IMG/VR virus record: IMGVR_UViG_3300022752_000015
Location: 148,805-212,804 of that record
DNA: 64,000 nt
Reading direction: 5' to 3' (one strand)
Below the pieces are notes generated by a model, which was given only the letters and a program-made list of their open reading frames with translations, was not told where the DNA came from and did no database searches. Below, one piece after another: positions 31,662 through 57,093 of this stretch (the stretch's first letter is position 1; each line of letters opens with the position of its first letter). Both the position numbers and the translations under genes were made by a program.

Positions 31662-31961
31662 ATGAAGATTACCCCTTCGCAATTACGTAAAATCATAAAA
31701 GAAGAAGTCAAAAGATTGTCAGAAGGTCCTGAAGAGGAACAAAAGGTTTTTTATGACGCTTTACGTCAAGCAGAAGATGCCTTAATGAAAGTCGTAGAGA
31801 TCGTAGAAAAATCCGGAAAGGGAAGCCCTGAAAAATTTGGAGGACAAGGTTCTCAACAGGTTAATCTAAAGGCGGTCCTTGCACAGATTTCCAACCAAAG
31901 AGAAATTGAACAAGACGCACCAGATTATGGCGGCGGTTTATTCGATCTGCCTGGCAAATAA
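31662..31961 (+). CDS. Small protein with MKIT..LRKIIKEE N-terminus
   Basis: AAGGAG SD; N-terminal motif shared with five other ORFs. Confidence 0.7.
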   Translation: MKITPSQLRKIIKEEVKRLSEGPEEEQKVFYDALRQAEDALMKVVEIVEKSGKGSPEKFGGQGSQQVNLKAVLAQISNQREIEQDAPDYGGGLFDLPGK

Positions 31962-31997
31962 TTGAACATATAACTCTACAAGTATTACGATGCTATC

Positions 31998-32981
31998 GTG
32001 GCCATTCGTTCGGTCTCCGATAGCATTAATTTTTTTGAATCTGTTTTTGGTAAGGGGCGTATATCTTCCAACGGTATCAACTTTGACGTTCGTTGTCCAA
32101 TATGCGCCTCGGCAGATCCAACGAAAAAGAAACTTTCTATTCGCACTGACACCACCGCAAATCATTGTTGGGTTTGTGGGTGGAAGTCTCGTACCATAGT
32201 TCCTCTAATAAGAAAATTTGGAACTCAAAATCAACTAGCAGAATTCAAAGAGTTGTTTGGACTGTTCGATAACTCTTTTCATCTGGTTACTGGTGAAAAA
32301 GAAGAAAAACAAAAGCTCGAACTTCCAAAAGATTTTAGGCTTTTGACGTTAGCAAATAGTATGGATCCTGACGTAAAGGCCGCCTGGCGCTATGTGTACT
32401 CTCGAGGACTTACTGACAGAGATGCTTGGTACTTCAAACTAGGAGTTTCTGATGAGCCTAGATGGAAGAGAAGAATCATCATGCCTTCATTTGATGCGCA
32501 AGGAAATTTAAATTTTTTTGTAGCTAGAGCGATCGATAAGGACAAAAAGCCAAAGTATGATAGCCCAGACGTAGATAAAAATCCTATCGTCTTTAACGAT
32601 CTAAACATAGATTGGTCAAAGAGATTGGTGCTAGTAGAAGGTTCATTCGATCTAGTAAAGTGCCCAGAAAACTCTACTGCAATATTAGGATCGGATCTTG
32701 ACGAGAGACACGAAATCTTTAATAAAATCTTACTACACAACACACCAATTGCGTTATCTTTAGATGGAGACATGTGGGACAAAAAGACTCCTAAAATAGC
32801 GAAAAAGTTGCAGGAATATAATGTAGACGTCATCGTAGTTGATGTTCGTCCGTGGGGAGACCCAGGTAGCATGTCTAAAATCGAATTTGAAGAAGCGTTA
32901 AAAGAAGCAAAGCAAATTAGCTGGGACGATAACTTTAGTAGAAAGTTAAAAAAAGCTACTGCAGTAAGTTTTGCATTTTAG
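31998..32981 (+). CDS. DNA primase (Zn finger plus Toprim)
   Basis: CPIC...HCWVC, FVARAI..KY, LVEGSFD and LDGD Toprim motifs. Confidence 0.85.
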   Translation: MAIRSVSDSINFFESVFGKGRISSNGINFDVRCPICASADPTKKKLSIRTDTTANHCWVCGWKSRTIVPLIRKFGTQNQLAEFKELFGLFDNSFHLVTGEKEEKQKLELPKDFRLLTLANSMDPDVKAAWRYVYSRGLTDRDAWYFKLGVSDEPRWKRRIIMPSFDAQGNLNFFVARAIDKDKKPKYDSPDVDKNPIVFNDLNIDWSKRLVLVEGSFDLVKCPENSTAILGSDLDERHEIFNKILLHNTPIALSLDGDMWDKKTPKIAKKLQEYNVDVIVVDVRPWGDPGSMSKIEFEEALKEAKQISWDDNFSRKLKKATAVSFAF

Positions 32982-32996
32982 TGATAATTAGTTATT

Positions 32997-33911
32997 GTGA
33001 GAAAGCACGTAATTACAGAAGCCAGGATTAGAGAAATAATCCAAGAAGAAATAGCAATTCAACAGCTCCTTGAAGAAGGATTTTTAGATTCTGCTAAAGA
33101 TGCAATAAAAAAATTGTCAGTTGCAGTTACTAATAGATTTAAGGAAGCAGCAGACAAGTGGGCAAACGTTATCTCTGAAAAGATAAACATGATGCAGACG
33201 ATCCCTCCAGAGATATTGACAATCGTCAATGCACTCGAAGAAGGAAAGAAGTCGACAGGAGAATCAATAGAGTTAGATGAAACGTTAAAGCTAGCTCAGT
33301 CTCTCAGTAAAGAAAATCCTCTTGCTTCTGCTGAAGAAGAATTATCTGGTCCTATCTACGCAAAAGCAAAAGAATTAAAAGAAATGTATGTTGTATTGTC
33401 CGATAATTCTTACGTCAAACAAAGAAAAAACTTACACGAAGCAGGAATAATAACTGGAGCAGGTATTGGATTAGCGATCATCGGAGGTTTACCTTTGTTA
33501 TTTAAAGGGTTAACTAAGCTGGCTGTCTATTTGAAAGCTGAAAAATTAGCTTCAATCTTTGAAAAAGCTGAACATGTTACTCACGCTTTTGAGCAAAAAT
33601 TTATAAAATTTGTAATCCCTAGCAAACTTTCATATTTCGTATATAAGTTTTTAGCTGAAAAAGGATTTCATACGGCTGGTGAAAAAGAAGTTTTATCTTA
33701 CGAAAGATATAAATCTTCGAAATCAGAGCAAAAAACAGCAGAATTAATCTATAAGGCTTTATTGATATATTTTGCTTTTCAAGGACTAGCAGGCGCTCTC
33801 AAGGCTGGTGCATCCTTGTTAGGATTTGTTGAAGGAACTGCAACAACAGTGAAAGGCATCGAACTAGCAAAAGGATTTGCTGACGTTCGAAAAATTGTCA
33901 GCGGAGCATGA
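32997..33911 (+). CDS. Hypothetical protein with IREIIQEE N-terminus and hydrophobic segments, possibly ejected
   Basis: Shared N-terminal motif, L-x-E sites and Gly-rich hydrophobic helices. Confidence 0.6.
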   Translation: MRKHVITEARIREIIQEEIAIQQLLEEGFLDSAKDAIKKLSVAVTNRFKEAADKWANVISEKINMMQTIPPEILTIVNALEEGKKSTGESIELDETLKLAQSLSKENPLASAEEELSGPIYAKAKELKEMYVVLSDNSYVKQRKNLHEAGIITGAGIGLAIIGGLPLLFKGLTKLAVYLKAEKLASIFEKAEHVTHAFEQKFIKFVIPSKLSYFVYKFLAEKGFHTAGEKEVLSYERYKSSKSEQKTAELIYKALLIYFAFQGLAGALKAGASLLGFVEGTATTVKGIELAKGFADVRKIVSGA

Positions 33912-33949
33912 GATATGAACATACGCATTATCTACGTTACATTTAGATA

Positions 33950-37419: not shown

Positions 37420-37800
37420 ATGGCTGATATTGATCTTAGTTCTCTTGGAGAAGCAATCGATACATCATGGGGTAGATCTTCCATGCCTTTGACTTCAGGT
37501 TTTTCAGCAAAAATGTCGCTTGCTGGTCAAAATCAACTTCACTTGGTTTATCAGACTGTGATTAACTTTGCTTCAGAGCGAGAAATGCTTAGAGTAAAAT
37601 TATTTGAGTCTGAGCAAGCTGTAAAAAATGTGAAATCGATAGTTGATAACGTTAAAAGCAAATATAAAGATCTGTCTGGACAGTCTTTAAAAGTTAAAGA
37701 AGTTTCTTCAGGCGAATCTGTTGAAATAATTGGTCTTAATGTTCACAATCCAAAAAGAACTGCTTTGTACAGAAGAAAGTGTATATTTGAACTAGCATAA
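37420..37800 (+). CDS. Hypothetical protein upstream of terminase
   Basis: GAGG SD; TAATG coupling to terminase. Confidence 0.65.
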   Translation: MADIDLSSLGEAIDTSWGRSSMPLTSGFSAKMSLAGQNQLHLVYQTVINFASEREMLRVKLFESEQAVKNVKSIVDNVKSKYKDLSGQSLKVKEVSSGESVEIIGLNVHNPKRTALYRRKCIFELA

Positions 37801-39443
37801 TGTCTGAAAAAACGTTAACAAAACAGCAACAAGTCAACGAGATAATTCGTTGTGGCAAAGATCCGTCGTATTTTATAAAGCACTACGCAAGAATCCAGCA
37901 TCCATTAAAAGGTACGATTCCATTTGAGTTGTATCCTTTTCAAGATGAATGCTTAGAAAACTTTCAAAAGCATAGATTTAACATTGTGCTAAAATCCAGA
38001 CAGCTGGGTTTATCAACGGTTTCAGCTGCATATGCCACTTGGTTAGCTATTTTTTACAAAGATAAAAACGTATTAGTTATTGCAACAAAACTTGCTACTG
38101 CTCAGAACTTTATTAAGAAAGTAGCTGTTTTACTACAATCTTTGCCAAAATGGCTTTTGATGCCCAAGTTTGAGCCATCAAAGCAACAAATATCTTTTAG
38201 CAATGGATCTCAGATAAAGGCTGTACCTACGTCGGAAGATGCAGGCCGTTCTGAAGCTCTATCTTTGCTAATTGTAGACGAGTGTGCATTTATTAGAGAT
38301 TTTGACACGATATGGACAGGTCTCTATCCCACGCTTACGACAGGTGGTAACGCTATTCTAATTTCTTCTCCTAATGGAGTAGGTGGTTTATATTACAGAT
38401 TATGGGTTGAAGCAGAAGCTGGGGCTAACGAATTTAATCCGATAAGACTTCCGTGGACTGTTCACCCAGAGCACGATGAAATTTGGTTTGCAAAAGAAAC
38501 TAGAAATCTACCAAAAAGAAAAGTTAGTCAAGAATATCTTTGCGATTTTATCACGTCTGGAGATACGTTCTTACAGTCAGAAGATCTAGAAGATTTAAGA
38601 TCCAAAATATCTCCTCCTATTGAAAAATCAGGATTTGATAGAAACGTTTGGATATGGGATCACCCTTCACCAGAAAAATCATATGTAATTTCTGCAGATG
38701 TTGCTAGAGGCGATGCATCAGATTATTCTGCGTTTCATGTAATAGATCAATCTGCTTGTGAGATTGTAGCAGAATACATGGGTAAAATACCTCCAGAAAA
38801 GTTTGCAGAGTTATTGGCTGAATGGGGTAAAAAATATAATAATGCTTTCATCTGTCCAGAGAATAACACATTTGGATATTTCGTGAATGTTAAGCTTAGA
38901 GACTCCGGATATCCACGATTGTATTACCACAACAATAAAGGTGATCCGTTTTCTTACTCTTCAGTAGATCCTTCAGAACTACCAGGGTTCCCAACGAATC
39001 AAAAAACGAGAGTTCAAGTTTTAACAAAGCTTGAAGAACTTATAAGAAATAAGGTTTTAAGGTGCCATTCTCAACGCCTGTACGATCAACTTCAGGCTTT
39101 TATTTGGAATGGTAATAAGCCTATGGCTTCTAAAGATAGTCATGATGATTTAATCATGAGTCTTGCTATTGGTGCGTGGCTAGTTGAAGACGGAAGTGGT
39201 GCTAATGAATCTGCTATGGCTATGGCATATGCTATGCTAAAAGCGACGGGTATCTCTAGAAGAGAATTAAATGAAATTCCTAATGGCCCTAATTCAGCTA
39301 GTCCATACATCAGTCCTTCATTAAGAGCTTCAACTGGAATTAATCCTCAAAATGTGTATAAATTGCGAGAACCAACCGACGTTAAACATGTCAACGCTAA
39401 TTCTGATCCACTAATTGCAGATTTATCTTGGTTGTATCGTTGA
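37800..39443 (+). CDS. Terminase large subunit (T4 gp17-like)
   Basis: LYPFQ, KSRQLGLST (Walker A), LIVDECAF (Walker B), SSPNG, ADVARG..DYS and HDDLIMS nuclease motifs. Confidence 0.95.
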   Translation: MSEKTLTKQQQVNEIIRCGKDPSYFIKHYARIQHPLKGTIPFELYPFQDECLENFQKHRFNIVLKSRQLGLSTVSAAYATWLAIFYKDKNVLVIATKLATAQNFIKKVAVLLQSLPKWLLMPKFEPSKQQISFSNGSQIKAVPTSEDAGRSEALSLLIVDECAFIRDFDTIWTGLYPTLTTGGNAILISSPNGVGGLYYRLWVEAEAGANEFNPIRLPWTVHPEHDEIWFAKETRNLPKRKVSQEYLCDFITSGDTFLQSEDLEDLRSKISPPIEKSGFDRNVWIWDHPSPEKSYVISADVARGDASDYSAFHVIDQSACEIVAEYMGKIPPEKFAELLAEWGKKYNNAFICPENNTFGYFVNVKLRDSGYPRLYYHNNKGDPFSYSSVDPSELPGFPTNQKTRVQVLTKLEELIRNKVLRCHSQRLYDQLQAFIWNGNKPMASKDSHDDLIMSLAIGAWLVEDGSGANESAMAMAYAMLKATGISRRELNEIPNGPNSASPYISPSLRASTGINPQNVYKLREPTDVKHVNANSDPLIADLSWLYR

Positions 39444-39856: not shown

Positions 39857-41827
39857 GTGGCAAAAGAAGAAAAAAATTTATTTCAGCGTCTTACTCGCTT
39901 ATTTAAAAGCGGTCCTGTAGTCAAGAGAAAGATTCGGACATTAGACACTACAATAGCGGTTGCTGACAAAGCTAAATCGTCAGCGGCCTTGTTGTTTCAG
40001 CGTTCAATGTCTCCCACTTATTCTACTATAACTGCAAATTCTTATAACTTGTCAGAACGTTTGATGAGATATCAAGATTTTGCAGAGATGGAATATACGC
40101 CTGAAATTGCTGCGGCGCTCGATATCTACGCCGACGAAACATGCGCGCAAGATGAAAAGGGCAGAGTACTTCACATTTATTCAGATAACGAAAAAATAAA
40201 ACAGATATTAGAAGATCTATTCTACAACACTCTAAATGTAGAATTTAACTTACGTTCATGGGCTAGAAATTTGGTTAAGTATGGAGACTTCTTTCTCTAT
40301 AATGATGTATCTCCCACACAAGGAGTTATCAACGCATTCCCAATTCCAGTAAACGAAATTGAAAGAGAAGAAAATTACGATAGAGAAGATCCATTTGCAG
40401 TAAGATATCGTTGGACGACTATGGGAAATAGAACATTAGAAAATTGGGAAATTTCTCATTTTAGGTACATCGGAAATGACATGTTTCTACCTTATGGATC
40501 TTCCGTCATAGAAGCCGCCAGAAGAATCTGGCGTCAACTAATTCTTCTTGAAGACGCTATGCTTGTGTATAGAGTTGTCCGCGCACCAGAACGTCGTGTA
40601 TTTTACGTAGACGTTGCGAATATTCCGGCCGAGAACGTTCCAATGTACGTTGAAGAACAAAGAAAGAACCTTAGAACTAATCAAGTTGTTGATAGGAACA
40701 CAGGTAGGGTCGATCTAAGATATTCTCCTTTGAGTGTAGAAGATGATTATTTCATTCCAGTGAGAGGCGGAGAAAGCGGAACAAAGATTGACACCTTGGC
40801 AGGTGGTCAAAATGCAGCTTCGGTTGAAGATGTAGCTTACATTCAAAAAAAGCTATTTGCCGCATTAAAAATTCCAAGAGCTTATTTGGGATATGATGAA
40901 ATGTTGTCTTCAAAAGCTACATTAGCTCAAGAAGATATCAGATTTTCTAGAACGATAAATGTGGTTCAAAAGACGATTGTTTCTGAACTTAATAAGTTGG
41001 CGATTATACATCTTTATGCAAATGGATTTGACAACGAAGATTTACAAAACTTTACTTTACGTCTTTCTAACCCTTCGACTGTTGCCCAACAACAGAAGCT
41101 AGAACTCTGGAGATCAAAGTTTGAAATAGGTGGTGCTTTACCTGAAGGAATGGGAAGCAAAAGATTTATTCAAAAAGAAATTTGGGGATTGAATGACGAA
41201 CAAATTCTTGCAATCAATGAACAAAGAAAGCAAGAAAAGATCATTGATGCTGAAGTAGAAGCTGCTAAACCTGAAGGTGAAGAAGAAGCGCCTGCTGGTG
41301 GCGAAGAAGAAGCGCCTGCTGGAGAAGAAGCAGGAGGCGAAGAAGAAGAAGAAGCAGGCGGCGGAGGAGGCGGATTATTTGCAGGAGATAAACCTTCAGA
41401 TGATGCATCTCCTGATGCAAAGTTGCTATTATCGGTAGATGAACCCGAACAAATGCCAAATTTATACGAAAAAGACAAGCTACCCATAAAGAAATCAAAT
41501 AAGACTAAATACAGCAATAAAAAAGCGCAGTATGATAGTTCTAGAAGAAAAAAATGGCAACTACATGAACCAGATTTCGTAAAAATGACGTCAACTCATC
41601 AAGCGTTGAATGACCCGTATGATACGAAGTGGTTAAAAAACCAATTTAAAGATCCATTAGGATTATCAGAGTCGATAAACGAAACTTATCACGTGACAAG
41701 TCTTCCTCCTGATGTAATGTCTTCTCTAAAAAAGATGACAGTAGCTTTGAAGATTCAAAAAAATAAAGAAGGATTATTAACAGAATCTAACGAGGAAGCG
41801 GCTTTAGATCTTGACATCGAAGACTGA
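39857..41827 (+). CDS. Portal protein (T4 gp20-like)
   Basis: EDAMLVYRVVRAPERRVFYVDV, EDDYFIP and TKIDTLAGG motifs; acidic C-terminal tail. Confidence 0.93.
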   Translation: MAKEEKNLFQRLTRLFKSGPVVKRKIRTLDTTIAVADKAKSSAALLFQRSMSPTYSTITANSYNLSERLMRYQDFAEMEYTPEIAAALDIYADETCAQDEKGRVLHIYSDNEKIKQILEDLFYNTLNVEFNLRSWARNLVKYGDFFLYNDVSPTQGVINAFPIPVNEIEREENYDREDPFAVRYRWTTMGNRTLENWEISHFRYIGNDMFLPYGSSVIEAARRIWRQLILLEDAMLVYRVVRAPERRVFYVDVANIPAENVPMYVEEQRKNLRTNQVVDRNTGRVDLRYSPLSVEDDYFIPVRGGESGTKIDTLAGGQNAASVEDVAYIQKKLFAALKIPRAYLGYDEMLSSKATLAQEDIRFSRTINVVQKTIVSELNKLAIIHLYANGFDNEDLQNFTLRLSNPSTVAQQQKLELWRSKFEIGGALPEGMGSKRFIQKEIWGLNDEQILAINEQRKQEKIIDAEVEAAKPEGEEEAPAGGEEEAPAGEEAGGEEEEEAGGGGGGLFAGDKPSDDASPDAKLLLSVDEPEQMPNLYEKDKLPIKKSNKTKYSNKKAQYDSSRRKKWQLHEPDFVKMTSTHQALNDPYDTKWLKNQFKDPLGLSESINETYHVTSLPPDVMSSLKKMTVALKIQKNKEGLLTESNEEAALDLDIED

Positions 41828-41878: not shown

Positions 41879-42739
41879 ATGTCATCCTCACATAATAAAA
41901 AAAGAAATACTGGATTAATTTACGAGTTTCTAATTAAAACCATATCAAAAGCGCTCGTAGAAAATAACAAACCTCAATCATCAAAAGCGCTTAAAATCAT
42001 TAAGCAAAATTTCAAATCTGGTACTGAGTTATATAGAGAATTTAGACTCATAAATGCTTTAATGAAAACTACAGTTGGATCAGAATCAATTGCTGCTTCA
42101 ATAATTTTTGAAGCAAAAAACGCTGCTAGAAGTCATGATATGCATGAATTAGACAGAGAAAAATCAATTTTAATTAGGAGTATAAACCACCAATTAAAAG
42201 ACGATAATTTTTATGACCAGCATATCAATGAATACAAGATGTTTGCAACAATACAGAATTTGCTCAACAGTTGGAGGAACCCTAATTCTGACTTGCAAAA
42301 AACAGCTGAATATGAAGAAGCATTGATGAAGTGGCTTGTTTCTCCAAAGAGTCAGTTGCAAGAAGAAAAGGTCAACGAAAACTCAGTAGGAACGAATCGT
42401 CTTCTTATGAAAGTCATGATGAAGAAGTTAAGCGAAAAATACGATGGAGCTCTTACGTCTGATCAAAAATCTCTTATCAAAGCTTATGCTTTTGCTACAG
42501 CCAATGACGACAGCTCTACGATCTTAAAAAAATTGAGTGAAATAAGAGAAAGATTATTGGAATCTATCAATGATTATCTGGAGTCAAAAGAATCTTCAAA
42601 GTATTTGAACACTAAATTATTAGAAGTAAAGAATAAGTTGTTCGAACCGTTAAATGAAGTTAACGATTCCACTATTTCTGAATACATGTTATACGCAAAG
42701 TTAGTTGATGAACTAACTTCAGGAGGGTCAGATGTCTGA
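41879..42739 (+). CDS. Hypothetical head-module protein (possible prohead core)
   Basis: AAAGGA SD; lies between portal and protease; helical with L-x-E sites. Confidence 0.6.
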   Translation: MSSSHNKKRNTGLIYEFLIKTISKALVENNKPQSSKALKIIKQNFKSGTELYREFRLINALMKTTVGSESIAASIIFEAKNAARSHDMHELDREKSILIRSINHQLKDDNFYDQHINEYKMFATIQNLLNSWRNPNSDLQKTAEYEEALMKWLVSPKSQLQEEKVNENSVGTNRLLMKVMMKKLSEKYDGALTSDQKSLIKAYAFATANDDSSTILKKLSEIRERLLESINDYLESKESSKYLNTKLLEVKNKLFEPLNEVNDSTISEYMLYAKLVDELTSGGSDV

Positions 42740-43340
42740 CTTGAAACTCTTAAATTCTTATGAAATATTTGATTATTCTTCTGAAACTATAAAAGAGTCC
42801 AGAGAAAAGAACGATGGAAAAATCTTGATGAAAGGTATTCTGCAAAAAGCAGATACCTTGAATCAAAATGGCAGAATCTACCCGAAAAATATTCTAGAAA
42901 GAGAAATAAGAAACTATCAAAAGTTTATAGCTGAAAATAGAGCTTTAGGAGAGTTAGATCATCCTGATTCTTCAGTGGTAAATTTAAAAAATGTTTCTCA
43001 TATAGTTCGTGAAGCATACTTAGACGGAGATGTCGTCTATGGAAGCGTGGAAATTCTAGACACCCCTTCTGGTAAGATACTACAATCCTTAGTCGAAAGC
43101 GGAGTAAAATTAGGAATATCATCTAGAGGAGTTGGTTCTACAAAAAAGCAAGGCGATTACCAGATAGTTCAAGATGATTTTCAATTGATCTGTTGGGACT
43201 ATGTTTCTGAACCATCAACACCAGGTGCGTTCATGATGGCAGAAGGAAAAACAATAAATCCCTCTGAGGTAAGAGGAATTTTTAATCGTTCTGACAGAAT
43301 CAATAGAATTATTAATGATATTTTATCTACAAAGAAGTAA
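42732..43340 (+). CDS. Prohead core protease (T4 gp21-like)
   Basis: NQNGRIY, GELDHP, SH, LGISSRGVGS and DYVSEPSTPGA motifs. Confidence 0.93.
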   Translation: MSDLKLLNSYEIFDYSSETIKESREKNDGKILMKGILQKADTLNQNGRIYPKNILEREIRNYQKFIAENRALGELDHPDSSVVNLKNVSHIVREAYLDGDVVYGSVEILDTPSGKILQSLVESGVKLGISSRGVGSTKKQGDYQIVQDDFQLICWDYVSEPSTPGAFMMAEGKTINPSEVRGIFNRSDRINRIINDILSTKK

Positions 43341-43370: not shown

Positions 43371-43796
43371 ATGAAAATGACTCGTAATGAACTGAAAGAT
43401 CTAGTGAAAGAATGTCTTGTGGAAATTTTATCCGAAGGCATGGGAAATTCCACAAAATTAAAAGAGTCATTCGCTTTTCAAGAAAAAAAAGTGCATAAAA
43501 AACCTGCTGATATGATTTCTTATGGCCAAAGAAATCAGATAATGGATAAGAAAAGAATAAGCGAAGTCATAAAGACAGAGTCTAAAGGTGATCCTATTCT
43601 TGCTGCAATTTTAGCTGACACAGCTTCAACTACACTACCAAACATGTTAATGAATGAAGGTCACAATCACACACCACAACCGGTTGGTTCTGTAGAAAGA
43701 ATCGTAGCTTCTACAAATCCAGAAGAACTATTTGGGGATGAAGCAGCGTCGAAATGGGCAGCGTTAGCGTTTATGGACACATCAAAGAAATTTTGA
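43371..43796 (+). CDS. Head-module protein with MKMT..LKDLVKE N-terminus
   Basis: Shared N-terminal motif; position in the head module. Confidence 0.65.
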   Translation: MKMTRNELKDLVKECLVEILSEGMGNSTKLKESFAFQEKKVHKKPADMISYGQRNQIMDKKRISEVIKTESKGDPILAAILADTASTTLPNMLMNEGHNHTPQPVGSVERIVASTNPEELFGDEAASKWAALAFMDTSKKF

Positions 43797-43853: not shown

Positions 43854-44090
43854 ATGAAACTAACATCGAATTTGTTGAAGAGAATCATCATGCAAGAGGT
43901 CGCAAAATTTAAGGCAGAACGTAGCACAGAAGATGCAGCAAAAGATGCCGAAGAAGTAGATGCTGATGAATTTGCAGATACTATTGAGAATCCTCATAAT
44001 TATTACAAGGCACTTGGTCTTGAAGAAGCTAGACTAGTGAAACGTTTAGAGAAAATTCGTGAAGCAAAAAGAGCTCTTCGAAACAAGTGA
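43854..44090 (+). CDS. Small head-module protein with MKLT..LKRIIMQE N-terminus
   Basis: AAGG SD before ATG 43854; shared motif. Confidence 0.65.
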   Translation: MKLTSNLLKRIIMQEVAKFKAERSTEDAAKDAEEVDADEFADTIENPHNYYKALGLEEARLVKRLEKIREAKRALRNK

Positions 44091-44640: not shown

Positions 44641-46575
44641 ATGTCTAAACAGCTCTACGAAGAAGCAATAGCAGACGTAAAAAAACTAAAAGAAATAGCT
44701 GAAGATAACGCTAAAAGAGCAGTTATCGAGGCAGTTGCTCCACGAATTCGTGAGCTGATAGAAAAAGAGTTATTGGAAGAATCCTCCGCAGACATGTCTG
44801 CGGAGGATGATCATGATGATAAAAATCATGATAAAATATTGACAGATGATCCTACTAAAAAAGGACCTGAAGCTAAAAATAACGAAATGTCCATGTCAAT
44901 TGGCGAATTAACCTCAGAAGAAGATGAGAAAAAAGTTGAAGAGGACCAAACCGCTTCCGAGGTAACGCTTGAAGATGTCATGGAGATAATCGCGTCGAAG
45001 AGCAAGAACGAAACGCTCCGCGAATTTGAAGAAAAGTTACGCTATGTCGAAAAGATGATCGATTCGTTATCATCAATTGAACAAAGCATGAAAGAATCAA
45101 AAAGCTTTGAAAACAAAGTCTCTTCTCTTGAAGAAACGATCTCAGAGCTTTATGAACATGCAAACACGCGTATCGTAAGTTCAACTCAAAAGTTGAGCTG
45201 TAACCTTAAAATACAAAATTGCTTAAAAAAACTAGAAAAGCTTCAGGAGATTAAAATGAAGAAGAGAAATGGTCGTTTGGATGAAGAAACAATTAGCATT
45301 GAATTAACAGGAGTTCCTGACGACGTCGACCTCGAGAGCCTTGGAGTCAATTTGGTCTCCGGAGGCGGCGAAGAGGAAGACGAAGAAGCAGGCGAAGACA
45401 TGGAAGACCTCGGCGGCGAGGAAGAGGGTGGCGAAGACATGGAAGATCTCGGCGGAGATGACGAAGAAGGCGATGAGGACGAAGAAGACATGGAAGAAAT
45501 GTCTATGCCTAATACGCCGCAGACAGAATCTCGTCGTCTCAACGACAATTTGATTGTCGAGATTGACGAAGGTATGTTACGTCGTGAAATTGCACGCATG
45601 AAGGCTATTCGTGAAGAGGCAGTTCCTTCAACCAAGGGAGAAGCCCCAGGATCAGATGAGTTTGACGACTTTGGCGACGCCGAAGAAGAAGGCGAGCCTC
45701 TTGAGATGACATTGAGTGAAGTCGACGAAGTTGATGAAGTCGATGAAGCTGCTATGACAGATGAGACCTACGAAGCCTATGGCGTAGAAGGTGAAGCAGC
45801 CGACAGAACCGATTCATCACCTGCCGCAGTGAATCGCCGCGAACAATACGCACAAACAAAAAAGCAAGGTGATTCTCCAGTCAATGAAGCTGACAAAGAT
45901 GAAGAGGACGAGGAAGCTGAAAAGTCTGCCGATGAAGCAGCTAAGTGTGAGTCAATCCGTCGTCAGATGGTCGCAGAGCTCAAGCTTCAAGAGTCTCTCC
46001 GTGCAAGAGCCCGTGGTGCAGCGCGCCTTTATGAGGCATCTAAAGCAAAGTTCAATAAGACCCGTACGCTTTCTGAACGCAAGGAAATTGCTCGTCATGG
46101 AGATGCTCACAAGGCAGCCTACACGGGATTCGCAAAGCGTTACAACGAATCTGTTAAACGATTCAACAAACTTTCAGAGGCGCTTGCTGAAGCAAAGCGT
46201 CCAAGCAACGTTCGCTCTAATAGCAACGTGAAACCTGGTGCGAGCGCAGGCGATGTTCAGCTCCGCAACAAGTTGGCAGAAACGAATCTGCTCAACGCCA
46301 AGCTCATGTTCACGAACAAGCTTCTTCAATCAGAAGCCTTAACCTCGCGCCAGAAATCGCAGGTTATTGCGCAGCTCGATGAAGCAGCCACGCTCCGCGA
46401 AGTGAAGCTTGTATATGAGAGCCTCGCCAAGACATTGGCAGCTCCGCGTAAGCCTGTAACAGAAGGTCGCGTTCTTGGATCTTCTTCTCAGGCAACACGT
46501 TCGGCTTCGGCACAATCCCTCAACGAGGGTTATGAAGCAGAGCGTTGGGCAAAGCTCGCAGGCATAGCTAAGTGA
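44641..46575 (+). CDS. Prohead scaffolding/core protein
   Basis: Immediately upstream of the major capsid gene; very acidic and coiled-coil; repeated EDMEDLGG; many L-x-E sites. Confidence 0.75.
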   Translation: MSKQLYEEAIADVKKLKEIAEDNAKRAVIEAVAPRIRELIEKELLEESSADMSAEDDHDDKNHDKILTDDPTKKGPEAKNNEMSMSIGELTSEEDEKKVEEDQTASEVTLEDVMEIIASKSKNETLREFEEKLRYVEKMIDSLSSIEQSMKESKSFENKVSSLEETISELYEHANTRIVSSTQKLSCNLKIQNCLKKLEKLQEIKMKKRNGRLDEETISIELTGVPDDVDLESLGVNLVSGGGEEEDEEAGEDMEDLGGEEEGGEDMEDLGGDDEEGDEDEEDMEEMSMPNTPQTESRRLNDNLIVEIDEGMLRREIARMKAIREEAVPSTKGEAPGSDEFDDFGDAEEEGEPLEMTLSEVDEVDEVDEAAMTDETYEAYGVEGEAADRTDSSPAAVNRREQYAQTKKQGDSPVNEADKDEEDEEAEKSADEAAKCESIRRQMVAELKLQESLRARARGAARLYEASKAKFNKTRTLSERKEIARHGDAHKAAYTGFAKRYNESVKRFNKLSEALAEAKRPSNVRSNSNVKPGASAGDVQLRNKLAETNLLNAKLMFTNKLLQSEALTSRQKSQVIAQLDEAATLREVKLVYESLAKTLAAPRKPVTEGRVLGSSSQATRSASAQSLNEGYEAERWAKLAGIAK

Positions 46576-46628: not shown

Positions 46629-48509
46629 ATGAAATCTTTTACAATTGATCAGCTTGCACAGGGCATCAAAGAGCGTCACGTCGGCGCCGAGCGTGCCCGT
46701 CTTACAGAGAAGTGGAGCCGCACAGGTCTCCTCCGTGGCCTCGATGGCACACGTCGCGAAGTGATGGCACAGCTCCTTGAGAACCAGGCAGCACAGGTCC
46801 TCAAAGAGAGCAACAGCCTCTCAACAGGCGGTGGCAACGTGACATCAAGCGGACAGATCCAGGGCTTCACAAACATCGCGTTCCCAATCGTCCGTCGCGT
46901 CTTCGGCGGTCTCGTTTCAAACGAGCTTGTTTCAATCCAACCAATGAGCCTCCCCTCAGGTCTCATCTTCTACCTTGATTACACATATGGTACGAACGTT
47001 GGACAGGCAGCAGGCGACACAACAAACTCGACATACACACGCGGTCAGTCTATCTATAACAACCCCACGGGCAAGGGAGTCCAGAGCGGATCTCTCGCAA
47101 CGGGCGGTATGTATGACCTCGTAGGATCAGGTTACTCAAAGGTGACCGGTTCTCTCCAGGCATTCAACGTTGCAGGAGCAGGCGTTGCAGAGCTCGGTAT
47201 GTGGGTCGGTGCAGACGGTCAAGGTAGCTTCTACAACGGTATGCTTTCAAGCTCGTTGGATTTCAGCGGAAGCAACGCTCGTCTCATGGACTTCGATGGT
47301 CAGGTCGAGACAGCTCTCAGCCTCAACCAACTTGATGCATGCTTCCTCTACGTTTCGTCATCTGTCTTCACGACAGCAAACGCAGCAGCAGATCTCCTCG
47401 CAGTCGATCAGATCGCACTCTTCGGTGGTGTAACGGGAGCAACAGCATGGGGCAGCAGCTACCAAGGTGGAACGGGCGTTCTCAACCTCCGTCGCCTCAA
47501 TAAGCGTGGTAACTGGTCTACGACAGGGTTCACACCTGATGCACTTAACGGTACTCACGTACAGTTCGTCGTCAAGGGCGCAAATGCAGCTAATCTCGTC
47601 AAGACCTCAGGTGCTAATCTCGCGTTCTCTCTCAAGGCAGGCCTCACAGTTGACAGCTCAAGCGGCGCGACCCTAACGGTTCCCTCGTTCGAGTCTGACT
47701 TCGGAGCAACACCAGCACCAGCAATCCCAGAGATCGACATCAAGATCGAGTCGATTGCAATCACAGCAACAACCCGCAAGCTCCGTGCTCGCTGGTCACC
47801 AGAGCTCGCACAGGACCTCAACGCCTACCACAGCATGGACGCAGAGGTTGAGCTCACCTCGATCCTCTCAGAGCAGATCGCCCTTGAGATCGATCGCGAG
47901 ATTCTCAACGACCTCGTCACACAGGCCAACGGCGCCAATTACTACTGGTCACGCGCTCCTGGCAAGTTTGTCAACAAGACAACAGGCCAGCCTGTAACAC
48001 TCGCATCAAGCCTCTCAATCGGACCACAATTCACCGGTACGGTTCGCGAGTGGTACGAGACTCTCGTCGAGACAGTCATCGACGTTGCCAACACGATCCA
48101 CCGTAAGACACTCCGCGGATCAGCAAACTTCATGGTCACAGGACCAGACGTTGCAACAATCCTCGAGAGCTCGGTCCTCTACAAGCCCAAGTTCTCGATC
48201 GATGGCGAAGGTCAGGTCGGCAGCCCCTTCACAATCGGTGCAGAGGCAATCGGTACAGTCAGCAACCGCTTCACAGTCTACAAGGATCCTTACTTCCCAC
48301 GTAACAAGATCCTCGTCGGCTACAAGGGCGGAAGCTACCTCGAGACAGGATACGTATACGCACCATACGTTCCACTCATCGTGACGCCAACAATCTTCGC
48401 ACCTGAGGACTTCACACCACGTAAGGGCGTGATGACCCGCTACGGTAAGAAGATGGTCCGTTCGGACTTCTACGGCACCGTCACGGTACTCGACATGAAC
48501 ATCATCTGA
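46629..48509 (+). CDS. Major capsid protein (T4 gp23-like)
   Basis: LLENQ, QPMSLPSGLIF, RKLRARWSPELAQDL.A.H..DAE.EL and YAPYVP..TRYG motifs; AGGAG SD. Confidence 0.97.
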   Translation: MKSFTIDQLAQGIKERHVGAERARLTEKWSRTGLLRGLDGTRREVMAQLLENQAAQVLKESNSLSTGGGNVTSSGQIQGFTNIAFPIVRRVFGGLVSNELVSIQPMSLPSGLIFYLDYTYGTNVGQAAGDTTNSTYTRGQSIYNNPTGKGVQSGSLATGGMYDLVGSGYSKVTGSLQAFNVAGAGVAELGMWVGADGQGSFYNGMLSSSLDFSGSNARLMDFDGQVETALSLNQLDACFLYVSSSVFTTANAAADLLAVDQIALFGGVTGATAWGSSYQGGTGVLNLRRLNKRGNWSTTGFTPDALNGTHVQFVVKGANAANLVKTSGANLAFSLKAGLTVDSSSGATLTVPSFESDFGATPAPAIPEIDIKIESIAITATTRKLRARWSPELAQDLNAYHSMDAEVELTSILSEQIALEIDREILNDLVTQANGANYYWSRAPGKFVNKTTGQPVTLASSLSIGPQFTGTVREWYETLVETVIDVANTIHRKTLRGSANFMVTGPDVATILESSVLYKPKFSIDGEGQVGSPFTIGAEAIGTVSNRFTVYKDPYFPRNKILVGYKGGSYLETGYVYAPYVPLIVTPTIFAPEDFTPRKGVMTRYGKKMVRSDFYGTVTVLDMNII

Positions 48510-50827: not shown

Positions 50828-51175
50828 ATGAAACTAACAGAACGTCAGTTGCGCAAGATCATACTAGAAGAATTAAACAACATTCATGAAGCAGGAGAAG
50901 AAGCTGCTGCAACAGGAAAAGTAGAAGGCCCAATAGAACAGCTAAGAATGAAGCTACAAAAATTAGCTCCAGAAGCTAATGCAACGAAGTTAGCTTCAGC
51001 AATAAAAGACGTAGCAAAATCTAAAGATGCAGCTGCTGCTATAAGCGACGAAAAACTTATCGACAAGATGGAAAGACAAGCGTTAGGAACAGCTTTCTTA
51101 AAGATTATAATATCTGATCCAGGAGATATCCAGTCTATCATTGGGTTAATAAAACAGATTAAAACAGGTTCTTGA
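50828..51175 (+). CDS. Small protein with MKLTERQLRKIILEE N-terminus
   Basis: AAGGA SD; shared motif. Confidence 0.7.
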   Translation: MKLTERQLRKIILEELNNIHEAGEEAAATGKVEGPIEQLRMKLQKLAPEANATKLASAIKDVAKSKDAAAAISDEKLIDKMERQALGTAFLKIIISDPGDIQSIIGLIKQIKTGS

Positions 51176-51371: not shown

Positions 51372-51374
51372 AAT

Positions 51375-51402: not shown

Positions 51403-51405
51403 CAG

Positions 51406-54462: not shown

Positions 54463-55292
54463 GTGAGACCTTCTCCCGTTGAGATCTTCTCAACTTGCTC
54501 TTGAGTGATCTTATAAGATTCATCGCTCAACACATCGTCGACCAGCCCGAACCGCAACCTCAAAATCGCAGCTTCCTTTGGAGAAAGGCCCACGATGACT
54601 CGTTGAGCCAACTCTAACATTTGCTTGGAAGAAAAAATCTCGAGTGGATCTGACGTAGGATCCGCCTCAATCTTATCTTCAATCGTGTCAGCATCTGGAT
54701 CTGAGGACAGAGGTTGATCAAGCGAAATAATCGATCGACCACTGATCCTCATCGCATTGAAGATTGCATCTGAAGTGCCTGTCAACTCCTTCAACTCTTC
54801 AGGAGTTGGCTCACATCCCATCGCGTTCCTGTATTCTTCGGCGGCTGTCAACAACTTCTTTTGAGTATTCACGGCATGCGCGGACATTCTGATGACCCGC
54901 TTCTGCTTCAGGATGTGTTGACCAATCGCTTGCCTAACCCACCAGGTCGCGTAGGTCGAGAACCTAAATCCCTTCTTCCAATCAAACTTCTCAATCGCTC
55001 GCATCAACCCCATGTTGCCTTCTTGAATGATGTCTTCGAGAGGCATGCTGTGGTTCTTGTACTGCTTCGCCACGTAAACGACCAAACGTAGATTGGCCTC
55101 GATCAACTTTTTCTTCGCAATTGCCGCGTCAGATCCTCCTGCTTCGAGAATCTTAAAGAGCTCCATCATCTGTTCGTGCGAAAGCTGCTGGTGATTCTTT
55201 AGAGAAGAAAAGTAGCGATTCATTGAATCGCCGCCGAAGGCTGACTCTCGAGAGTTTTCTCGAGAAATTGTGCCTTGAGAACTCAAATTCAA
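54459..55292 (-). CDS. RpoD/RpoS-like sigma-70 factor
   Basis: LIEANLRLVV, DIIQEGNMGLMRAIEKFD..KGFRFSTYATWWVRQAI, SLD and ILRLRFGL motifs. Confidence 0.92.
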   Translation of the reverse strand: MNLSSQGTISRENSRESAFGGDSMNRYFSSLKNHQQLSHEQMMELFKILEAGGSDAAIAKKKLIEANLRLVVYVAKQYKNHSMPLEDIIQEGNMGLMRAIEKFDWKKGFRFSTYATWWVRQAIGQHILKQKRVIRMSAHAVNTQKKLLTAAEEYRNAMGCEPTPEELKELTGTSDAIFNAMRISGRSIISLDQPLSSDPDADTIEDKIEADPTSDPLEIFSSKQMLELAQRVIVGLSPKEAAILRLRFGLVDDVLSDESYKITQEQVEKISTGEGLT

Positions 55293-55570
55293 TCCTCCTC
55301 CGTGACGGAAACAGCCGAAACATACTTTGCGTGGGCCTCACGACGAGCTGTTCGAATCTGCAGCTCTCGTTGTACATAACACATCTCAACCTCCCATGCG
55401 GAAGGATTCAACCCATGACTATTCACCCTAGCGATGGAATCCGTCAGCGATCGCTGCATATTGTTCAATGAATCGTCGTCGATGATAGCCAGCTCATCAA
55501 ACGTGTGCACCTGAGGAAAAGGAATCGGGGAATCAACGTTGATCTTGTTTGTCTTTGCTTTCTTTGCCAT
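55289..55570 (-). CDS. Hypothetical protein coupled to sigma gene
   Basis: 93-aa ORF overlapping the sigma start. Confidence 0.6.
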   Translation of the reverse strand: MAKKAKTNKINVDSPIPFPQVHTFDELAIIDDDSLNNMQRSLTDSIARVNSHGLNPSAWEVEMCYVQRELQIRTARREAHAKYVSAVSVTEED

Positions 55571-55652
55571 TTTTTTCTCACTTTCGTGCGTTCATCAAAT
55601 CCAGGGAACAAATTCTTTTTATACCATGCAACATTAACATTGCACTGGAAGA

Positions 55653-56588
55653 TTAAAGGGGCACATCAAATTTCTTAGGCATCTCGAGGACAGCGAGATT
55701 TTTCATCTTCGCCTCCACCTCTAGATCCACTGCATCGCGCCGCAGGCGCTCGAGCTGCACCGCAGGAATATAATGGATCATGTCGCTGTGCTTGCGCCGC
55801 TCGGTGAAAGATCCACCCTCCATGCCTGGCTCAGTGTTGCTGATGTGTTGCAGGGGTTTCACACCTTTAGGCCACGTCTCATCGGCTGCGTCCGCAGCCT
55901 CTGCGCCGTCCAATCCATCGTCGTTGAAAACATGATGATGCGAATCCCACACGATCGGCACACCCGTCTCCATCGACACCGGCAACAGATCCACCAACGA
56001 ATAGCACGTCTCGCAATTCTCCAGCGTCAATCGCGATCGACTAGCCTCAGGCAATGACCGAATCGCGTCGATCAGCCTCGTCTGCCGATCCGCCTTACCA
56101 CCATGCACGTTGATCGCGGCGTACGGACTCCGCGGCATCCCCATCGAATCAAACATCCACGCGTGATGCTCGAGCTCGACGATCGACTTCTCAACCACCG
56201 AGTCAGAATCCGACGACAACACGCAGAACTGACCCGGATGCGTCGTCAACCGAACGCCATGCTTCCTCGCCACCTCACCACACATCGCCAGCTCTCGCTT
56301 GAGAACATCGTTGTCCCACAATCCCCGAGGCACGCGATCATTCAACGGAAACATGGCGCTCGACACGCGAAACAACCGCACGCCACTCGCTGCCACCTTC
56401 CGTAACACGTCTCGCAACATTCGAGCATTGTGAAGGTACAACGATCGAATCGCATCCTCAGAGTATGCACCCCGCTCATATCGACCCAATTGCAACGTCT
56501 TCTCCTCCAACTCGTTGATGACCTGCAACTTGCCGCTCCGCGGCGCATTCTCGTGCCTAATCCAATGACAACAGACACCTAGTGCCAT
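55653..56588 (-). CDS. uvsE: UV-damage endonuclease
   Basis: FRVSS.MFP, HPGQF..LSS, NVHGG, LENCE, DSHHH, HSD and EVEAKMK motifs. Confidence 0.92.
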   Translation of the reverse strand: MALGVCCHWIRHENAPRSGKLQVINELEEKTLQLGRYERGAYSEDAIRSLYLHNARMLRDVLRKVAASGVRLFRVSSAMFPLNDRVPRGLWDNDVLKRELAMCGEVARKHGVRLTTHPGQFCVLSSDSDSVVEKSIVELEHHAWMFDSMGMPRSPYAAINVHGGKADRQTRLIDAIRSLPEASRSRLTLENCETCYSLVDLLPVSMETGVPIVWDSHHHVFNDDGLDGAEAADAADETWPKGVKPLQHISNTEPGMEGGSFTERRKHSDMIHYIPAVQLERLRRDAVDLEVEAKMKNLAVLEMPKKFDVPL

Positions 56589-56654
56589 AAGCTTGTGTAT
56601 ACCTTAATCCCTTAAGGCCACTTGTACAACAAACCACGTCCTCTATGCACCACG

Positions 56655-56690
56655 GGCCACATGAATTATTCCTGGATAATTCATGTGGCC
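56655..56690. repeat. Perfect 15-bp inverted repeat
   Basis: GGCCACATGAATTAT-TCCTGG-ATAATTCATGTGGCC. Confidence 0.85.
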
Positions 56691-56718
56691 TTCTACACAG
56701 ACGATTATTACAGTTTAT

Positions 56719-57093
56719 TCAGGTGCCACCGAAGGCGTCATCCACCACGTCCATCATGGTGCGATCGTCTCGAGAATCTCCCTTCAAGACGTCAATCTTC
56801 GTACGTGCCGCGGCGGCGGCCCAGCGCACGACCACCTCTCCTGGCTCTCTGAGAGACAACTCGACGAATGCCCCCGTCTCAGGATCGCTCAACCTCGCAA
56901 TGGTTCCATCACGCATCCCATCTAGATCAGGACCCATGTCGTACACGAGATCAGGATTGGTCGCGGCCTCGTCTGCCAATATCTCCATCACCGGCTCAGC
57001 CACAAGCCTCCACTGAATCTCTTCGGCCCCTCCGGTCAACGACTCAAACTCTTCTCTAATGATCTGTTTCAATCTCGGCAACGTCAACTTCAT
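56719..57093 (-). CDS. Small protein with MKLTLPRLKQIIREE N-terminus
   Basis: GGAG SD before ATG 57093; shared motif. Confidence 0.7.
   Translation of the reverse strand: MKLTLPRLKQIIREEFESLTGGAEEIQWRLVAEPVMEILADEAATNPDLVYDMGPDLDGMRDGTIARLSDPETGAFVELSLREPGEVVVRWAAAAARTKIDVLKGDSRDDRTMMDVVDDAFGGT

What the first reader, a model, noticed from the sequence alone, without database searches (positions are those of the whole stretch)
31662..57093. Six unrelated proteins share an N-terminal MK(L/I/M)T..L+.II.EE motif: candidate capsid-targeting and processing tag
Seen: MKITPSQLRKIIKEEV (31662), MRKHVITEARIREIIQEEI (32997), MKMTRNELKDLVKECL (43371), MKLTSNLLKRIIMQEV (43854), MKLTERQLRKIILEEL (50828) and MKLTLPRLKQIIREEF (57093, minus strand). 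The scaffold has the similar RIRELIEKELLEE. Most are followed closely by an L/I-x-E site (RLSE, LLEE, ILSE, NIHE). Established: T4 gp21 cleaves after (L/I)-x-E, and T4 internal proteins carry a short cleaved N-terminal capsid-targeting sequence. Inference: this is a portable tag that loads diverse cargo into the head for injection, and could be useful for engineering.
Basis: partly seen in the sequence, partly recalled or inferred. Interest (0 to 1): 0.6.

Follow-up and report, generated by a model that had tools for sequence, protein, structure and literature searches.

The report
Shared leader peptide on phage proteins
An uncultured freshwater jumbo phage related to T4 puts the same 22-residue N-terminal leader, ending in a T4-type protease site, on about 11 otherwise unrelated proteins; relatives carry it on up to about 40, so it is most likely a ticket into the assembling head, as with T4's injected internal proteins.

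Summary
The core motif occurs 5 times in the six-frame translation of the window, against 0.44 expected, and each time at an ORF start. The 212.8-kb contig has 10-11 tagged ORFs. Related contigs of 100-300 kb have 5-40, some in back-to-back arrays of up to 31 genes.

Across 405 non-redundant copies the consensus is MKITKRQLRRIIKEE[LIV]x[RK][LIV]LxE, and conservation collapses after residue 22. A [LIVM]-x-E ends at residues 19-25 in 71% of copies (background 13%). An I-x-E sits at residues 12-14 in 97%. The proteins behind the leader share no similarity and match no annotated family. Synonymous codons vary, so selection acts on the peptide.

The genome has a T4 gp21-family (S77) protease with the catalytic triad, and two tagged genes lie directly after it.

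Best reading (confidence 0.6): a prohead-targeting propeptide that the head protease removes, working like the T4 internal-protein leader but longer, different in sequence and far more widely used.

Verdict: a new variant of a known kind, and moderately to highly interesting.

The parts
31662..31961 (+). Tagged ORF, 99 aa: MKITPSQLRKIIKEEVKRLSE|GPEEE. It is the best match to the tag profile. Only 3 relatives were found by the word search restricted to residues 1-40.
   Evidence: (43.3 bits, E 8.6e-12)
32997..33911 (+). Tagged ORF, 304 aa, GTG start. The tag core is at residues 11-18 and the putative cut is LLEE27|G28. It is a conserved gene of the clade. The predicted fold is all-helical with hydrophobic segments.
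   Evidence: 127 homologues; G28 invariant, E27 nearly invariant; pTM 0.70, pLDDT below 50 at residues 20-29; no PDB match
37800..39443 (+). Large terminase, T4 type.
39857..41827 (+). Portal protein (T4 gp20 family).
   Evidence: PF07230, E 6e-73
42732..43340 (+). Prohead maturation protease, MEROPS S77 / T4 gp21 family. H77, S131 and D156 align with the T4 catalytic triad. It is the presumed enzyme that removes the leader.
   Evidence: 35% identity to T4 gp21
43371..43796 (+). Tagged ORF, 141 aa, immediately after the protease gene: MKMTRNELKDLVKECLVEILSE|G. The leader is nearly invariant across 26 orthologues. It is the same length as T4 gp68 (141 aa) and lies in the head block, but shows no detectable homology to it.
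43854..44090 (+). Tagged ORF, 78 aa: leader plus an acidic tail. It resembles T4 prohead core protein gp67 in size and composition only.
44641..46575 (+). Acidic coiled-coil protein of 644 aa, scaffold-like by position and composition. It has a conserved internal PRIRELIEKELLEE at nt 44740-44781, weakly tag-like.
46629..48509 (+). Major capsid protein (gp23 family). Its N-terminus MKxFTxxQLxxGI+E is conserved and weakly tag-like. A conserved QVL[KR]E|S at nt 46794-46808 lies where T4 gp23 is cut (LTE|A).
50828..51175 (+). Tagged ORF, 115 aa: MKLTERQLRKIILEELNNIHE|AGEE.
   Evidence: 40.1 bits
56719..57093 (-). Tagged ORF, 124 aa, start at 57093 with GGAG 8 nt upstream: MKLTLPRLKQIIREEFESLTGG. 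It is GC-rich (GC3 0.66), has only 5 homologues, and is predicted as helix plus a small beta domain (low confidence).

Best explanation
The motif is a roughly 22-residue N-terminal leader, a propeptide that forms an amphipathic helix. It directs otherwise unrelated proteins into the scaffolding core of the assembling prohead.

Once the shell is complete, the phage's gp21-family serine protease would cut the leader off after Glu. The main site would be the [LIV]-x-E at residues 20-22, and a second site the I-x-E at residues 12-14. The mature bodies would stay in the head, or in some cases be degraded as core components. By analogy with the T4 internal proteins, many would enter the host with the DNA.

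Shown here:
- The leader is a discrete module under selection at the peptide level.
- It ends in a T4-type site at a fixed position.
- The protease is present and has its catalytic residues.
- Two tagged genes lie inside the head-assembly gene block.

Inferred, not shown: binding to the core, cleavage, retention in the virion, and injection.
For: 1. N-terminal position. Of 610 tag matches (18 bits or more) in 2.9 Mb of related sequence, 96% begin with M, V or L at profile position 1, and 79% lie within 20 codons of the preceding stop.

2. A sharp module boundary. The column profile is MKITKRQLRRIIKEE[LIV]x[RK][LIV]LxE. After residue 22 the composition turns to G/D/E/P/S with no conservation.

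3. The cleavage motif. [LIVM]-x-E ends at residues 19-25 in 289 of 405 non-redundant tags (175 at residue 22, 64 at residue 21). The background in the same proteins is 13%. The following residue (P1') is mostly G, A, Q or S. I-x-E at residues 12-14 occurs in 393 of 405. T4 leaders read from NC_000866 likewise end I-A-E|A and I-T-E|A.

4. The enzyme. An S77 protease, 35% identical to T4 gp21, has its triad aligned. The S77 family was found in 15 of 18 large tag-bearing contigs and in 6 of 6 that are at least 90% complete.

5. Context. Tagged genes 43371 and 43854 lie between the protease and the scaffold and capsid genes. In T4 the small core proteins gp67 and gp68 also lie in this head-gene block, just before the protease gene. 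They assemble into the core and are cut by gp21 (PMC9958956).

6. A conserved junction in a conserved cargo. In the 57-sequence alignment of the family of the ORF at 32997, G28 is invariant and E27 nearly invariant. The AF2 model loses confidence exactly at residues 20-29.

7. The capsid protein keeps L-[KR]-E|S at the place that corresponds to the T4 gp23 cut.

8. [quoted passage not shown]

9. Weak support. An ATATAT-type element lies upstream of the portal gene and of 5 tagged genes. Contigs from RNA libraries match the protease, both adjacent tagged genes, the scaffold and the capsid gene in the same lake sample.
Against: - There is no direct evidence of packaging, cleavage or injection.
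- No cultured phage in the 50,697-record collection carries the tag, so no proteome exists.
- The leader shows no detectable homology to the T4 capsid-targeting sequence. The tag profile finds none of the T4 internal-protein genes.
- The family of the ORF at 43371 is not detectably related to T4 gp68.
- The mature bodies are mostly acidic (median pI 4.9).
- Up to about 40 tagged genes per genome is far more than any known set of packaged proteins defined by one leader.
- The tagged ORFs at 31662 and 32997 lie among replication genes (primase, SbcCD) rather than head genes.
- L-x-E in a Glu- and Leu-rich helix is a low-information motif. Its fixed position carries the argument, not its mere presence.
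- The promoter-like element is absent from most array genes in relatives.
Confidence: 0.6

Rival explanations
1. The leader does bring the proteins into the prohead, but they are building blocks of the scaffolding core. The amphipathic helix bundles with the scaffold and with other tags. They are degraded and expelled at maturation, like T4 gp22, gp67 and gp68, so there is no injected cargo.
For: Two tagged genes lie inside the head-gene block, and one is a small acidic protein like T4 gp67. The scaffold and the capsid propeptide carry weakly similar helices in the expected register. Many bodies are small, acidic, low-complexity and helical.
Against: Ten to forty different, rapidly diverging, often lineage-restricted proteins (5 homologues for the ORF at 57093) are hard to reconcile with a structural scaffold role. 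Some bodies look folded. Hypervariable tandem arrays look like arms-race genes.
Confidence: 0.15
2. The tag has nothing to do with the capsid. It is the conserved docking helix of an expanding family of small cytoplasmic host-takeover or anti-defence proteins. The helix binds a common hub, such as a host or phage enzyme, an adaptor or a chaperone, and the variable body supplies specificity. The L-x-E is simply part of the helix.
For: A conserved N-terminus with a hypervariable C-terminus in tandem arrays near genome ends is typical of accessory host-interaction genes. Neighbouring array members are sometimes clearly paralogous. No function could be assigned to any body. Several tagged genes in the window lie among replication genes.
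Against: This does not explain why the two genes directly after the prohead protease carry the tag in every relative examined. It does not explain why conservation stops exactly at a Glu preceded by [LIV]-x. It does not explain why the E|G junction stays invariant in a conserved 300-aa protein while the residues before the tag vary freely in number.
Confidence: 0.2
3. The conservation lies at the nucleic-acid level: a shared translation-initiation or regulatory element, or a recombination cassette boundary at the 5' end of the genes. The peptide would be a by-product.
For: Tags within one array are 81% identical in DNA, and some codons are nearly fixed (AGA AGA ATC ATC AAA GAA GAG). Such repeats would promote cassette shuffling, as proposed for the T-even hyperplastic regions (PMC2839356).
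Against: Leu8 uses CTT, CTC, CTA and TTA about equally, and Arg and Ile codons vary, while the residue is 99% conserved. The peptide is conserved between phages whose capsid proteins are only 37% identical. Residues 16-22 are conserved by class rather than by identity.
Confidence: 0.05

Closest known systems
Capsid-targeting sequence (leader) of the T-even internal proteins IPI, IPII, IPIII and Alt
   Same: - A short N-terminal leader is shared by proteins with no other similarity.
- It starts MK.
- It ends in (L/I)-x-E, the gp21 protease site.
- The genome encodes a gp21-family protease.
- The genes are variable and clustered.
- The known cargo are small injected anti-restriction proteins (PMC3012670, PMC12373910; T4 leaders read).
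   Different: - The sequence is different and about twice as long (22 against 10-19 residues), with two nested sites.
- No detectable homology to the T4 leader.
- It is used on 10-40 genes per genome, in arrays of up to 31, against 3-4 in T4 and at least 10 types reported across T-even phages.
- It is also present on conserved genes of the clade.
- The bodies are mostly acidic.
- Nothing has been tested experimentally.
T4 prohead core proteins gp67 and gp68
   Same: They are small proteins encoded in the head-gene block next to the protease gene. gp68 has the same length as the ORF at 43371 (141 aa). gp67 is acidic like the ORF at 43854, and contains TIDLIKEE...LIEG, which is reminiscent of the tag core plus a cleavage site.
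   Different: In T4 they lie before the protease gene; here the two tagged genes lie after it. No homology is detectable (hhalign probability 0.1%; no Pfam or PHROG hit).
Long propeptides of head and ejection proteins in phiKZ-like giant phages (SPN3US, phiKZ, 201phi2-1)
   Same: These are jumbo phages in which many head proteins are cut after Glu by a gp21-related protease. Their propeptides are thought to target the proteins into the prohead (PMC5694885).
   Different: Those phages use the S80 protease family and the motif A/S/G-x-E. Their propeptides are mostly longer than 100 residues, and they have no single shared leader. Here the protease is S77 and the leader is one short, uniform sequence.
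Encapsulin cargo-loading peptides
   Same: A short portable peptide loads diverse cargo into a shell with the HK97 fold.
   Different: It is C-terminal, it is not removed by a protease, and it is not a virus. The likeness is in how it works only.

Membership tests
T4-type capsid-targeting leader / internal-protein system | A short N-terminal leader shared by proteins that are otherwise unrelated | tested here: met
   Without the tag, BLASTP gives no pair below E 0.06. 405 non-redundant tagged proteins share only residues 1-22.
T4-type capsid-targeting leader / internal-protein system | The leader ends in the prohead-protease site (L/I)-x-E | tested here: met
   [LIVM]-x-E ends at residues 19-25 in 71% of tags against 13% background, with the mode at residue 22. 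I-x-E at residues 12-14 occurs in 97%.
T4-type capsid-targeting leader / internal-protein system | The genome encodes a gp21-family (S77) prohead protease with catalytic His, Ser and Asp | tested here: met
   PF03420 at E 2.4e-28. 35% identity to T4 gp21, with H77, S131 and D156 aligned. Present in 6 of 6 near-complete tag-bearing genomes.
T4-type capsid-targeting leader / internal-protein system | Sequence homology of the leader to the T4 CTS (MKTYQEFIAE) | tested here: not met
   The tag profile finds no internal-protein gene in T4. Its single hit is weak and lies elsewhere in the genome (E 0.024). Only the initial MK and the terminal I-x-E are shared.
T4-type capsid-targeting leader / internal-protein system | The proteins are incorporated into the prohead core and found in virions | not testable with these tools
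   No cultured carrier exists.
T4-type capsid-targeting leader / internal-protein system | The leader is removed during maturation | not testable with these tools
   This needs N-terminal proteomics or an in-vitro protease assay.
T4-type capsid-targeting leader / internal-protein system | The leader is sufficient to package a foreign protein, and the cargo is injected | not testable with these tools
   This needs experiments.
T4 prohead core proteins gp67 / gp68 | Sequence homology to T4 gp68 | tested here: not met
   hhalign of the 26-sequence family against T4 gp68 gives probability 0.1%.
T4 prohead core proteins gp67 / gp68 | Small genes encoded in the head-gene block next to the protease gene | tested here: met
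   The order here is portal, a 289-aa ORF, protease, tagged 141-aa ORF, tagged 78-aa ORF, a 164-aa ORF, scaffold, capsid protein. The order in T4 is 20, 67, 68, 21, 22, 23. The small genes therefore lie after the protease here and before it in T4.
phiKZ-type propeptides | S80-family protease, A/S/G-x-E sites and propeptides mostly longer than 100 residues | tested here: not met
   The protease is S77. The leader is 22 residues, and P3 is L, I or V.

The most novel reading that the evidence does not exclude
A large, widespread and so far uncultured lineage of aquatic jumbo T4-like phages marks up to about 40 genes per genome (an estimated tenth of them) with one leader peptide, and so loads a hypervariable set of small proteins into the capsid for co-injection with the DNA. 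This would be a much expanded counterpart of the three T4 internal proteins that disarm GmrSD restriction enzymes. If so, the leader is a one-line sequence filter that pulls hundreds of candidate first-strike anti-defence proteins out of metagenomes. The tandem arrays would be the place where that repertoire diversifies.
Probability: 0.35. Interest if true: 0.8.

Novelty: new variant of a known kind. Interest (0 to 1): 0.62.

Why it matters
How proteins are sorted into a phage head is still described as 'mysterious' even for T4 (PMC9958956). The only well-defined signal is the T-even leader, known from a handful of proteins.

This is a second, independent-looking leader with hundreds of natural variants. 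That gives a statistical picture of which parts of such a signal must stay constant: L8, I11, I12, E14 and the terminal [LIV]-x-E.

If the tagged proteins are packaged and injected, they are a ready-made catalogue of candidate anti-defence effectors from phages that cannot yet be grown.

The leader would also be a second candidate handle for packaging foreign proteins into T4-like capsids.

If the tag is not a capsid signal, then a 22-residue helix shared by a sizeable share of a jumbo phage's genes still needs an explanation.

Tried and rejected
- **Families.** Pfam and PHROGs on 61 tagged proteins gave nothing with an annotated function.
- **Protein atlas.** The look-up for the ORF at 31662 returned only unnamed viral clusters scoring below 0.9.
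- **Fold of the ORF at 32997.** The model is usable (pTM 0.70), but Foldseek found no PDB match at E <= 0.001.
- **Fold of the ORF at 57093.** The model is low-confidence (pLDDT 64, 5 sequences), so no fold search was run.
- **Homology to T4 gp68.** None. Homology to the Mel-JY01 gene at the same position is marginal and confined to the leader.
- **Leader-only tblastn against cultured phages.** Only the uncultured LR756508.1 was hit.
- **Word search restricted to residues 1-40.** It returned only 3 orthologues, so it cannot count tag carriers.
- **First DNA pattern.** It was rewritten.
- **Late-promoter idea.** An ATATAT-type element precedes the portal gene and 5 of about 11 tagged genes in this contig. 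It is absent from most array genes in relatives, so it is kept only as weak support.
- **Scaffold and capsid N-terminal resemblance to the tag.** Both align in the right register but weakly (P 0.0085 and 0.014). This is not treated as established.
- **RNA-library contigs.** They cover the two head-block tagged genes, but contigs cannot prove transcription.
- **A chimeric assembly as the cause of the GC jump.** Rejected, because relatives L001 and L002 show the same GC profile and the same tagged gene in the GC-rich part.


Full report
**Setting**

The window is the last 64 kb of a single 212,804-bp viral contig. CheckV rates the contig 59% complete. It carries a T4-type head module:
- large terminase, 37800-39443
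- gp20-family portal, 39857-41827
- a conserved 289-aa ORF, 41870-42739
- an S77 (gp21-family) prohead protease, 42732-43340
- two small ORFs, a 164-aa ORF and a 644-aa acidic coiled-coil protein in the scaffold position
- a gp23-family capsid protein, 46629-48509

The protease is 35% identical to T4 gp21, and its H77, S131 and D156 align with the T4 catalytic residues.

The nearest sequenced phages by capsid protein are only 35-47% identical: an uncultured 484-kb phage (LR756508.1), Microcystis phage Mel-JY01, Flavobacterium phage immuto and Rhodothermus phage RM378. IMG/VR holds hundreds of closer relatives, with 65-85% identical capsid proteins. A complete member with terminal repeats measures 297,894 bp. 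Near-identical DNA occurs in lake and freshwater metagenomes of at least 12 studies. This is an uncultured freshwater jumbo phage related to T4.

All six N-termini are at the stated coordinates. The core [LI][KR]x[LIV][IVL]x[EQ]E occurs five times in the six-frame translation of the window, always 7-10 residues behind a start codon. Shuffled sequence gives 0.44 on average and never more than 2. The full N-terminal pattern never appears in shuffles.

With the first 20 residues removed, no two tagged proteins resemble each other (best E 0.068). Inside the tag, Leu, Arg and Ile codons differ between copies, so the peptide is what is conserved.

The ORF at 32997 starts with GTG and scores weakly on the profile. 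Homologues such as P0002 start with Met at the same position. Most of the 120 listed homologues carry the tag core, preceded by a basic extension of variable length (about 5-20 residues).

The rest of the contig has five or six more tagged ORFs. A 24-column profile of the tag (A1) gives these counts:

| Record | Tagged ORFs |
|---|---|
| Five closest large contigs | 6-20 each |
| LR756508.1 (484 kb) | 25 |
| T4, Mel-JY01, immuto | one weak hit each, not a tag |
| RM378, a cyanomyovirus | none |
| 18 further large contigs | 5-37 each at E <= 0.001 |
| One near-complete 284-kb genome | 40 |

In 596 billion bases of bacterial and archaeal genomes the same pattern hit only nine stretches. All nine are in metagenome bins, and at least two lie on contigs of phage size.

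In some relatives the tagged genes form arrays. One has 31 consecutive small ORFs in 16 kb, each opening with MKITKRQLRRIIKEE.

**Anatomy of the tag**

- 96% begin with M, V or L at profile position 1, and 79% lie within 20 codons of the preceding stop.
- The column profile is M1 K2 I3 T4 K5 R6 Q7 L8 R9 R10 I11 I12 K13 E14 E15 [LIV]16 x [RK]18 [LIV]19 L20 x E22.
- L8 is 99% conserved, E14 97%, I11 91% and I12 89%.
- After position 22 the composition switches to G, D, E, P and S, and nothing is conserved.
- A [LIVM]-x-E ends at residues 19-25 in 289 of 405 tags: 175 at residue 22 and 64 at residue 21. In equivalent windows elsewhere in the same proteins the rate is 13%. The next residue is mostly G, A, Q or S.
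- A second I-x-E sits at residues 12-14 in 393 of 405.
- Drawn as a helix, L8, I11, I12, L16, L19 and L20 fall on one face.

The bodies have a median total length of 105 residues and a median mature pI of 4.9.

The set includes genes conserved across the clade: the ORF at 32997 with at least 127 homologues, and the ORFs at 43371 and 43854 in every relative examined. It also includes narrowly distributed genes, such as the ORF at 57093 with five homologues and the ORF at 31662 with three by a search restricted to its first 40 residues.

**Why a head-targeting, protease-removed leader is the best reading**

What is established for T4 is as follows.
- The scaffolding core contains gp22, gp21, gp67, gp68, IPI-III and Alt.
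- A short N-terminal capsid-targeting sequence places the internal proteins in the core, and will carry foreign proteins there.
- gp21 then degrades gp22, gp67 and gp68, and removes small N-terminal peptides from IPI-III, Alt, gp23 and gp24 (PMC9958956, PMC5694885).
- All the characterised proteases of this kind cut after Glu (PMC5694885). That T4's motif is (L/I)-x-E is my own knowledge, and it agrees with the T4 leaders read here: MKTYQEFIAE|A and ...TITE|A.
- T4 Ip1, Ip2 and Ip3 each block a different GmrSD restriction enzyme, and share only the leader (PMC12373910).

The present tag reproduces every sequence-level feature of that system:
- It is N-terminal.
- It sits on unrelated bodies.
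- It ends at a T4-type site at a fixed distance.
- It co-occurs with an S77 protease, found in 15 of 18 large carriers and in all six that are at least 90% complete.
- It is on the two genes directly after the protease gene, inside the head block where T4 also keeps its small core proteins gp67 and gp68.

Two further details fit. In the conserved family of the ORF at 32997, the E27|G28 junction is the most conserved feature of the N-terminal region, and the AF2 model loses confidence exactly at residues 20-29. The capsid protein of the whole clade keeps QVL[KR]E|S about 30 residues before the conserved IVRRV segment, which corresponds to the gp23 cut LTE|A in T4.

**What is weak or missing**

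- Nothing shows that these proteins are in virions, that the leader is removed, or that anything is injected.
- No cultured phage carries the tag.
- The leader is not detectably homologous to the T4 leader.
- The family of the ORF at 43371 is not detectably related to gp68.
- The resemblance of the leader to a conserved scaffold helix (PRIR[ED]LIExxLLxE) and to the capsid N-terminus (MKxFTxxQLxxGI+E) is in the expected register but statistically weak (P 0.0085 and 0.014). The idea that the leader mimics a scaffold helix is therefore only a lead.
- An ATATAT-type element precedes the portal gene and five tagged genes in this contig, but not most array genes in relatives.
- Contigs from lake RNA libraries match the protease, both adjacent tagged genes, the scaffold and the capsid gene. 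Contigs cannot prove transcription.
- No body has a recognisable function.

**Rivals**

(a) The tagged proteins enter the prohead but are core material that is degraded, not cargo. This probably applies to the two head-block genes. It is unlikely for dozens of fast-evolving array genes.

(b) The helix docks a family of cytoplasmic accessory proteins onto some common hub unrelated to the capsid. This fits the arrays. It does not fit the head-block genes, the sharp boundary at Glu, or the invariant E|G junction.

(c) The conservation is at the DNA or RNA level. The synonymous variation contradicts this, although the repeated 5' ends very probably do promote cassette shuffling.

**Comparison and novelty**

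The tag works like the T-even internal-protein leader. It is not a sequence member of that family: it is longer, it has two nested sites, and it is used one order of magnitude more often, in far larger arrays. It also occurs on conserved genes.

It differs from the phiKZ-type systems, which have an S80 protease, A/S/G-x-E sites and long heterogeneous propeptides.

Four full-text literature searches found no description of this tag, and the tagged proteins match no Pfam family and no PHROG of known function. I therefore class it as a new variant of a known kind.

**Verdict**

Interest is 0.62.

Noticed in passing
window 44000-64000 (for example MCP 46629-48509, UvdE 55653-56588, 60406-63698): GC content differs sharply from gene to gene within one phage. 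GC3 is 0.25-0.31 for the portal, protease and terminase genes, 0.61 for the capsid gene and 0.62-0.75 for the last 8 kb, where overall GC is 0.61. Relatives L001 and L002 show the same profile, so this is not an assembly chimera.
   Followed up: partly
L250 (G012:146000-162000), L251, L253: Relatives carry tandem arrays of 16-31 back-to-back small genes, each starting with the same leader and continuing with an unrelated body. Tags within one array are 81% identical in DNA.
   Followed up: partly
L250:7297-8949 (second tag at 7981); G009 186140/185630 and 275030/274661: Some open frames contain a second complete leader in frame in the middle of the protein. These may be fused cassettes, internal starts, or small polyproteins that the protease would split.
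   Followed up: no
window 33950-37087 (+): One 1045-aa ORF combines an SbcD-like phosphoesterase (residues 1-350) with an SbcC/Rad50-like ATPase. In T4 these are two genes (47 and 46).
   Followed up: no
window 54459-55292 (-): A sigma-70-type factor (regions 2 and 3) is encoded by the phage. RM378 has one too. An ATATAT[AT]-type element lies 7-30 nt upstream of the portal gene and of five tagged genes in this contig, and may be its promoter.
   Followed up: partly
window 41870-42739 (+): A 289-aa ORF lies between the portal and protease genes and matches no family. ORFs at the same position in Mel-JY01 and immuto share its N-terminal KxxNTG[LM]I[YF]E[FL]L, so it is a conserved unknown head-module gene.
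   Followed up: no
L081:6110-6337 (Mel-JY01) against window 43854-44090: In Mel-JY01 a ribosomal protein bS21 gene follows the protease and the gene that corresponds to the ORF at 43371. In this window the tagged acidic 78-aa ORF stands at about that place. A paper describes bS21 inside the head module of freshwater phages (10.1101/2021.10.11.463225).
   Followed up: no
window 51405-51477 (-), 51812-53149 (-), 55653-56588 (-), 49196-49540 (+): The window also holds a tRNA-Glu(UUC), an ATP-dependent DNA ligase and a UvdE UV-endonuclease. A 114-aa ORF just after the capsid gene has an HNH-like Cys/His pattern, judged from the sequence only and not scanned against families.
   Followed up: partly
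L255/L261 (NHDW01000006.1, 305,838 bp), L256/L260 (PBIO01000025.1, 101,404 bp): Contigs of phage size that carry several leaders are filed inside metagenome bins labelled Methylococcaceae and Halobacteriovorax. These are probably mis-binned jumbo-phage contigs and should not be read as host assignments.
   Followed up: no
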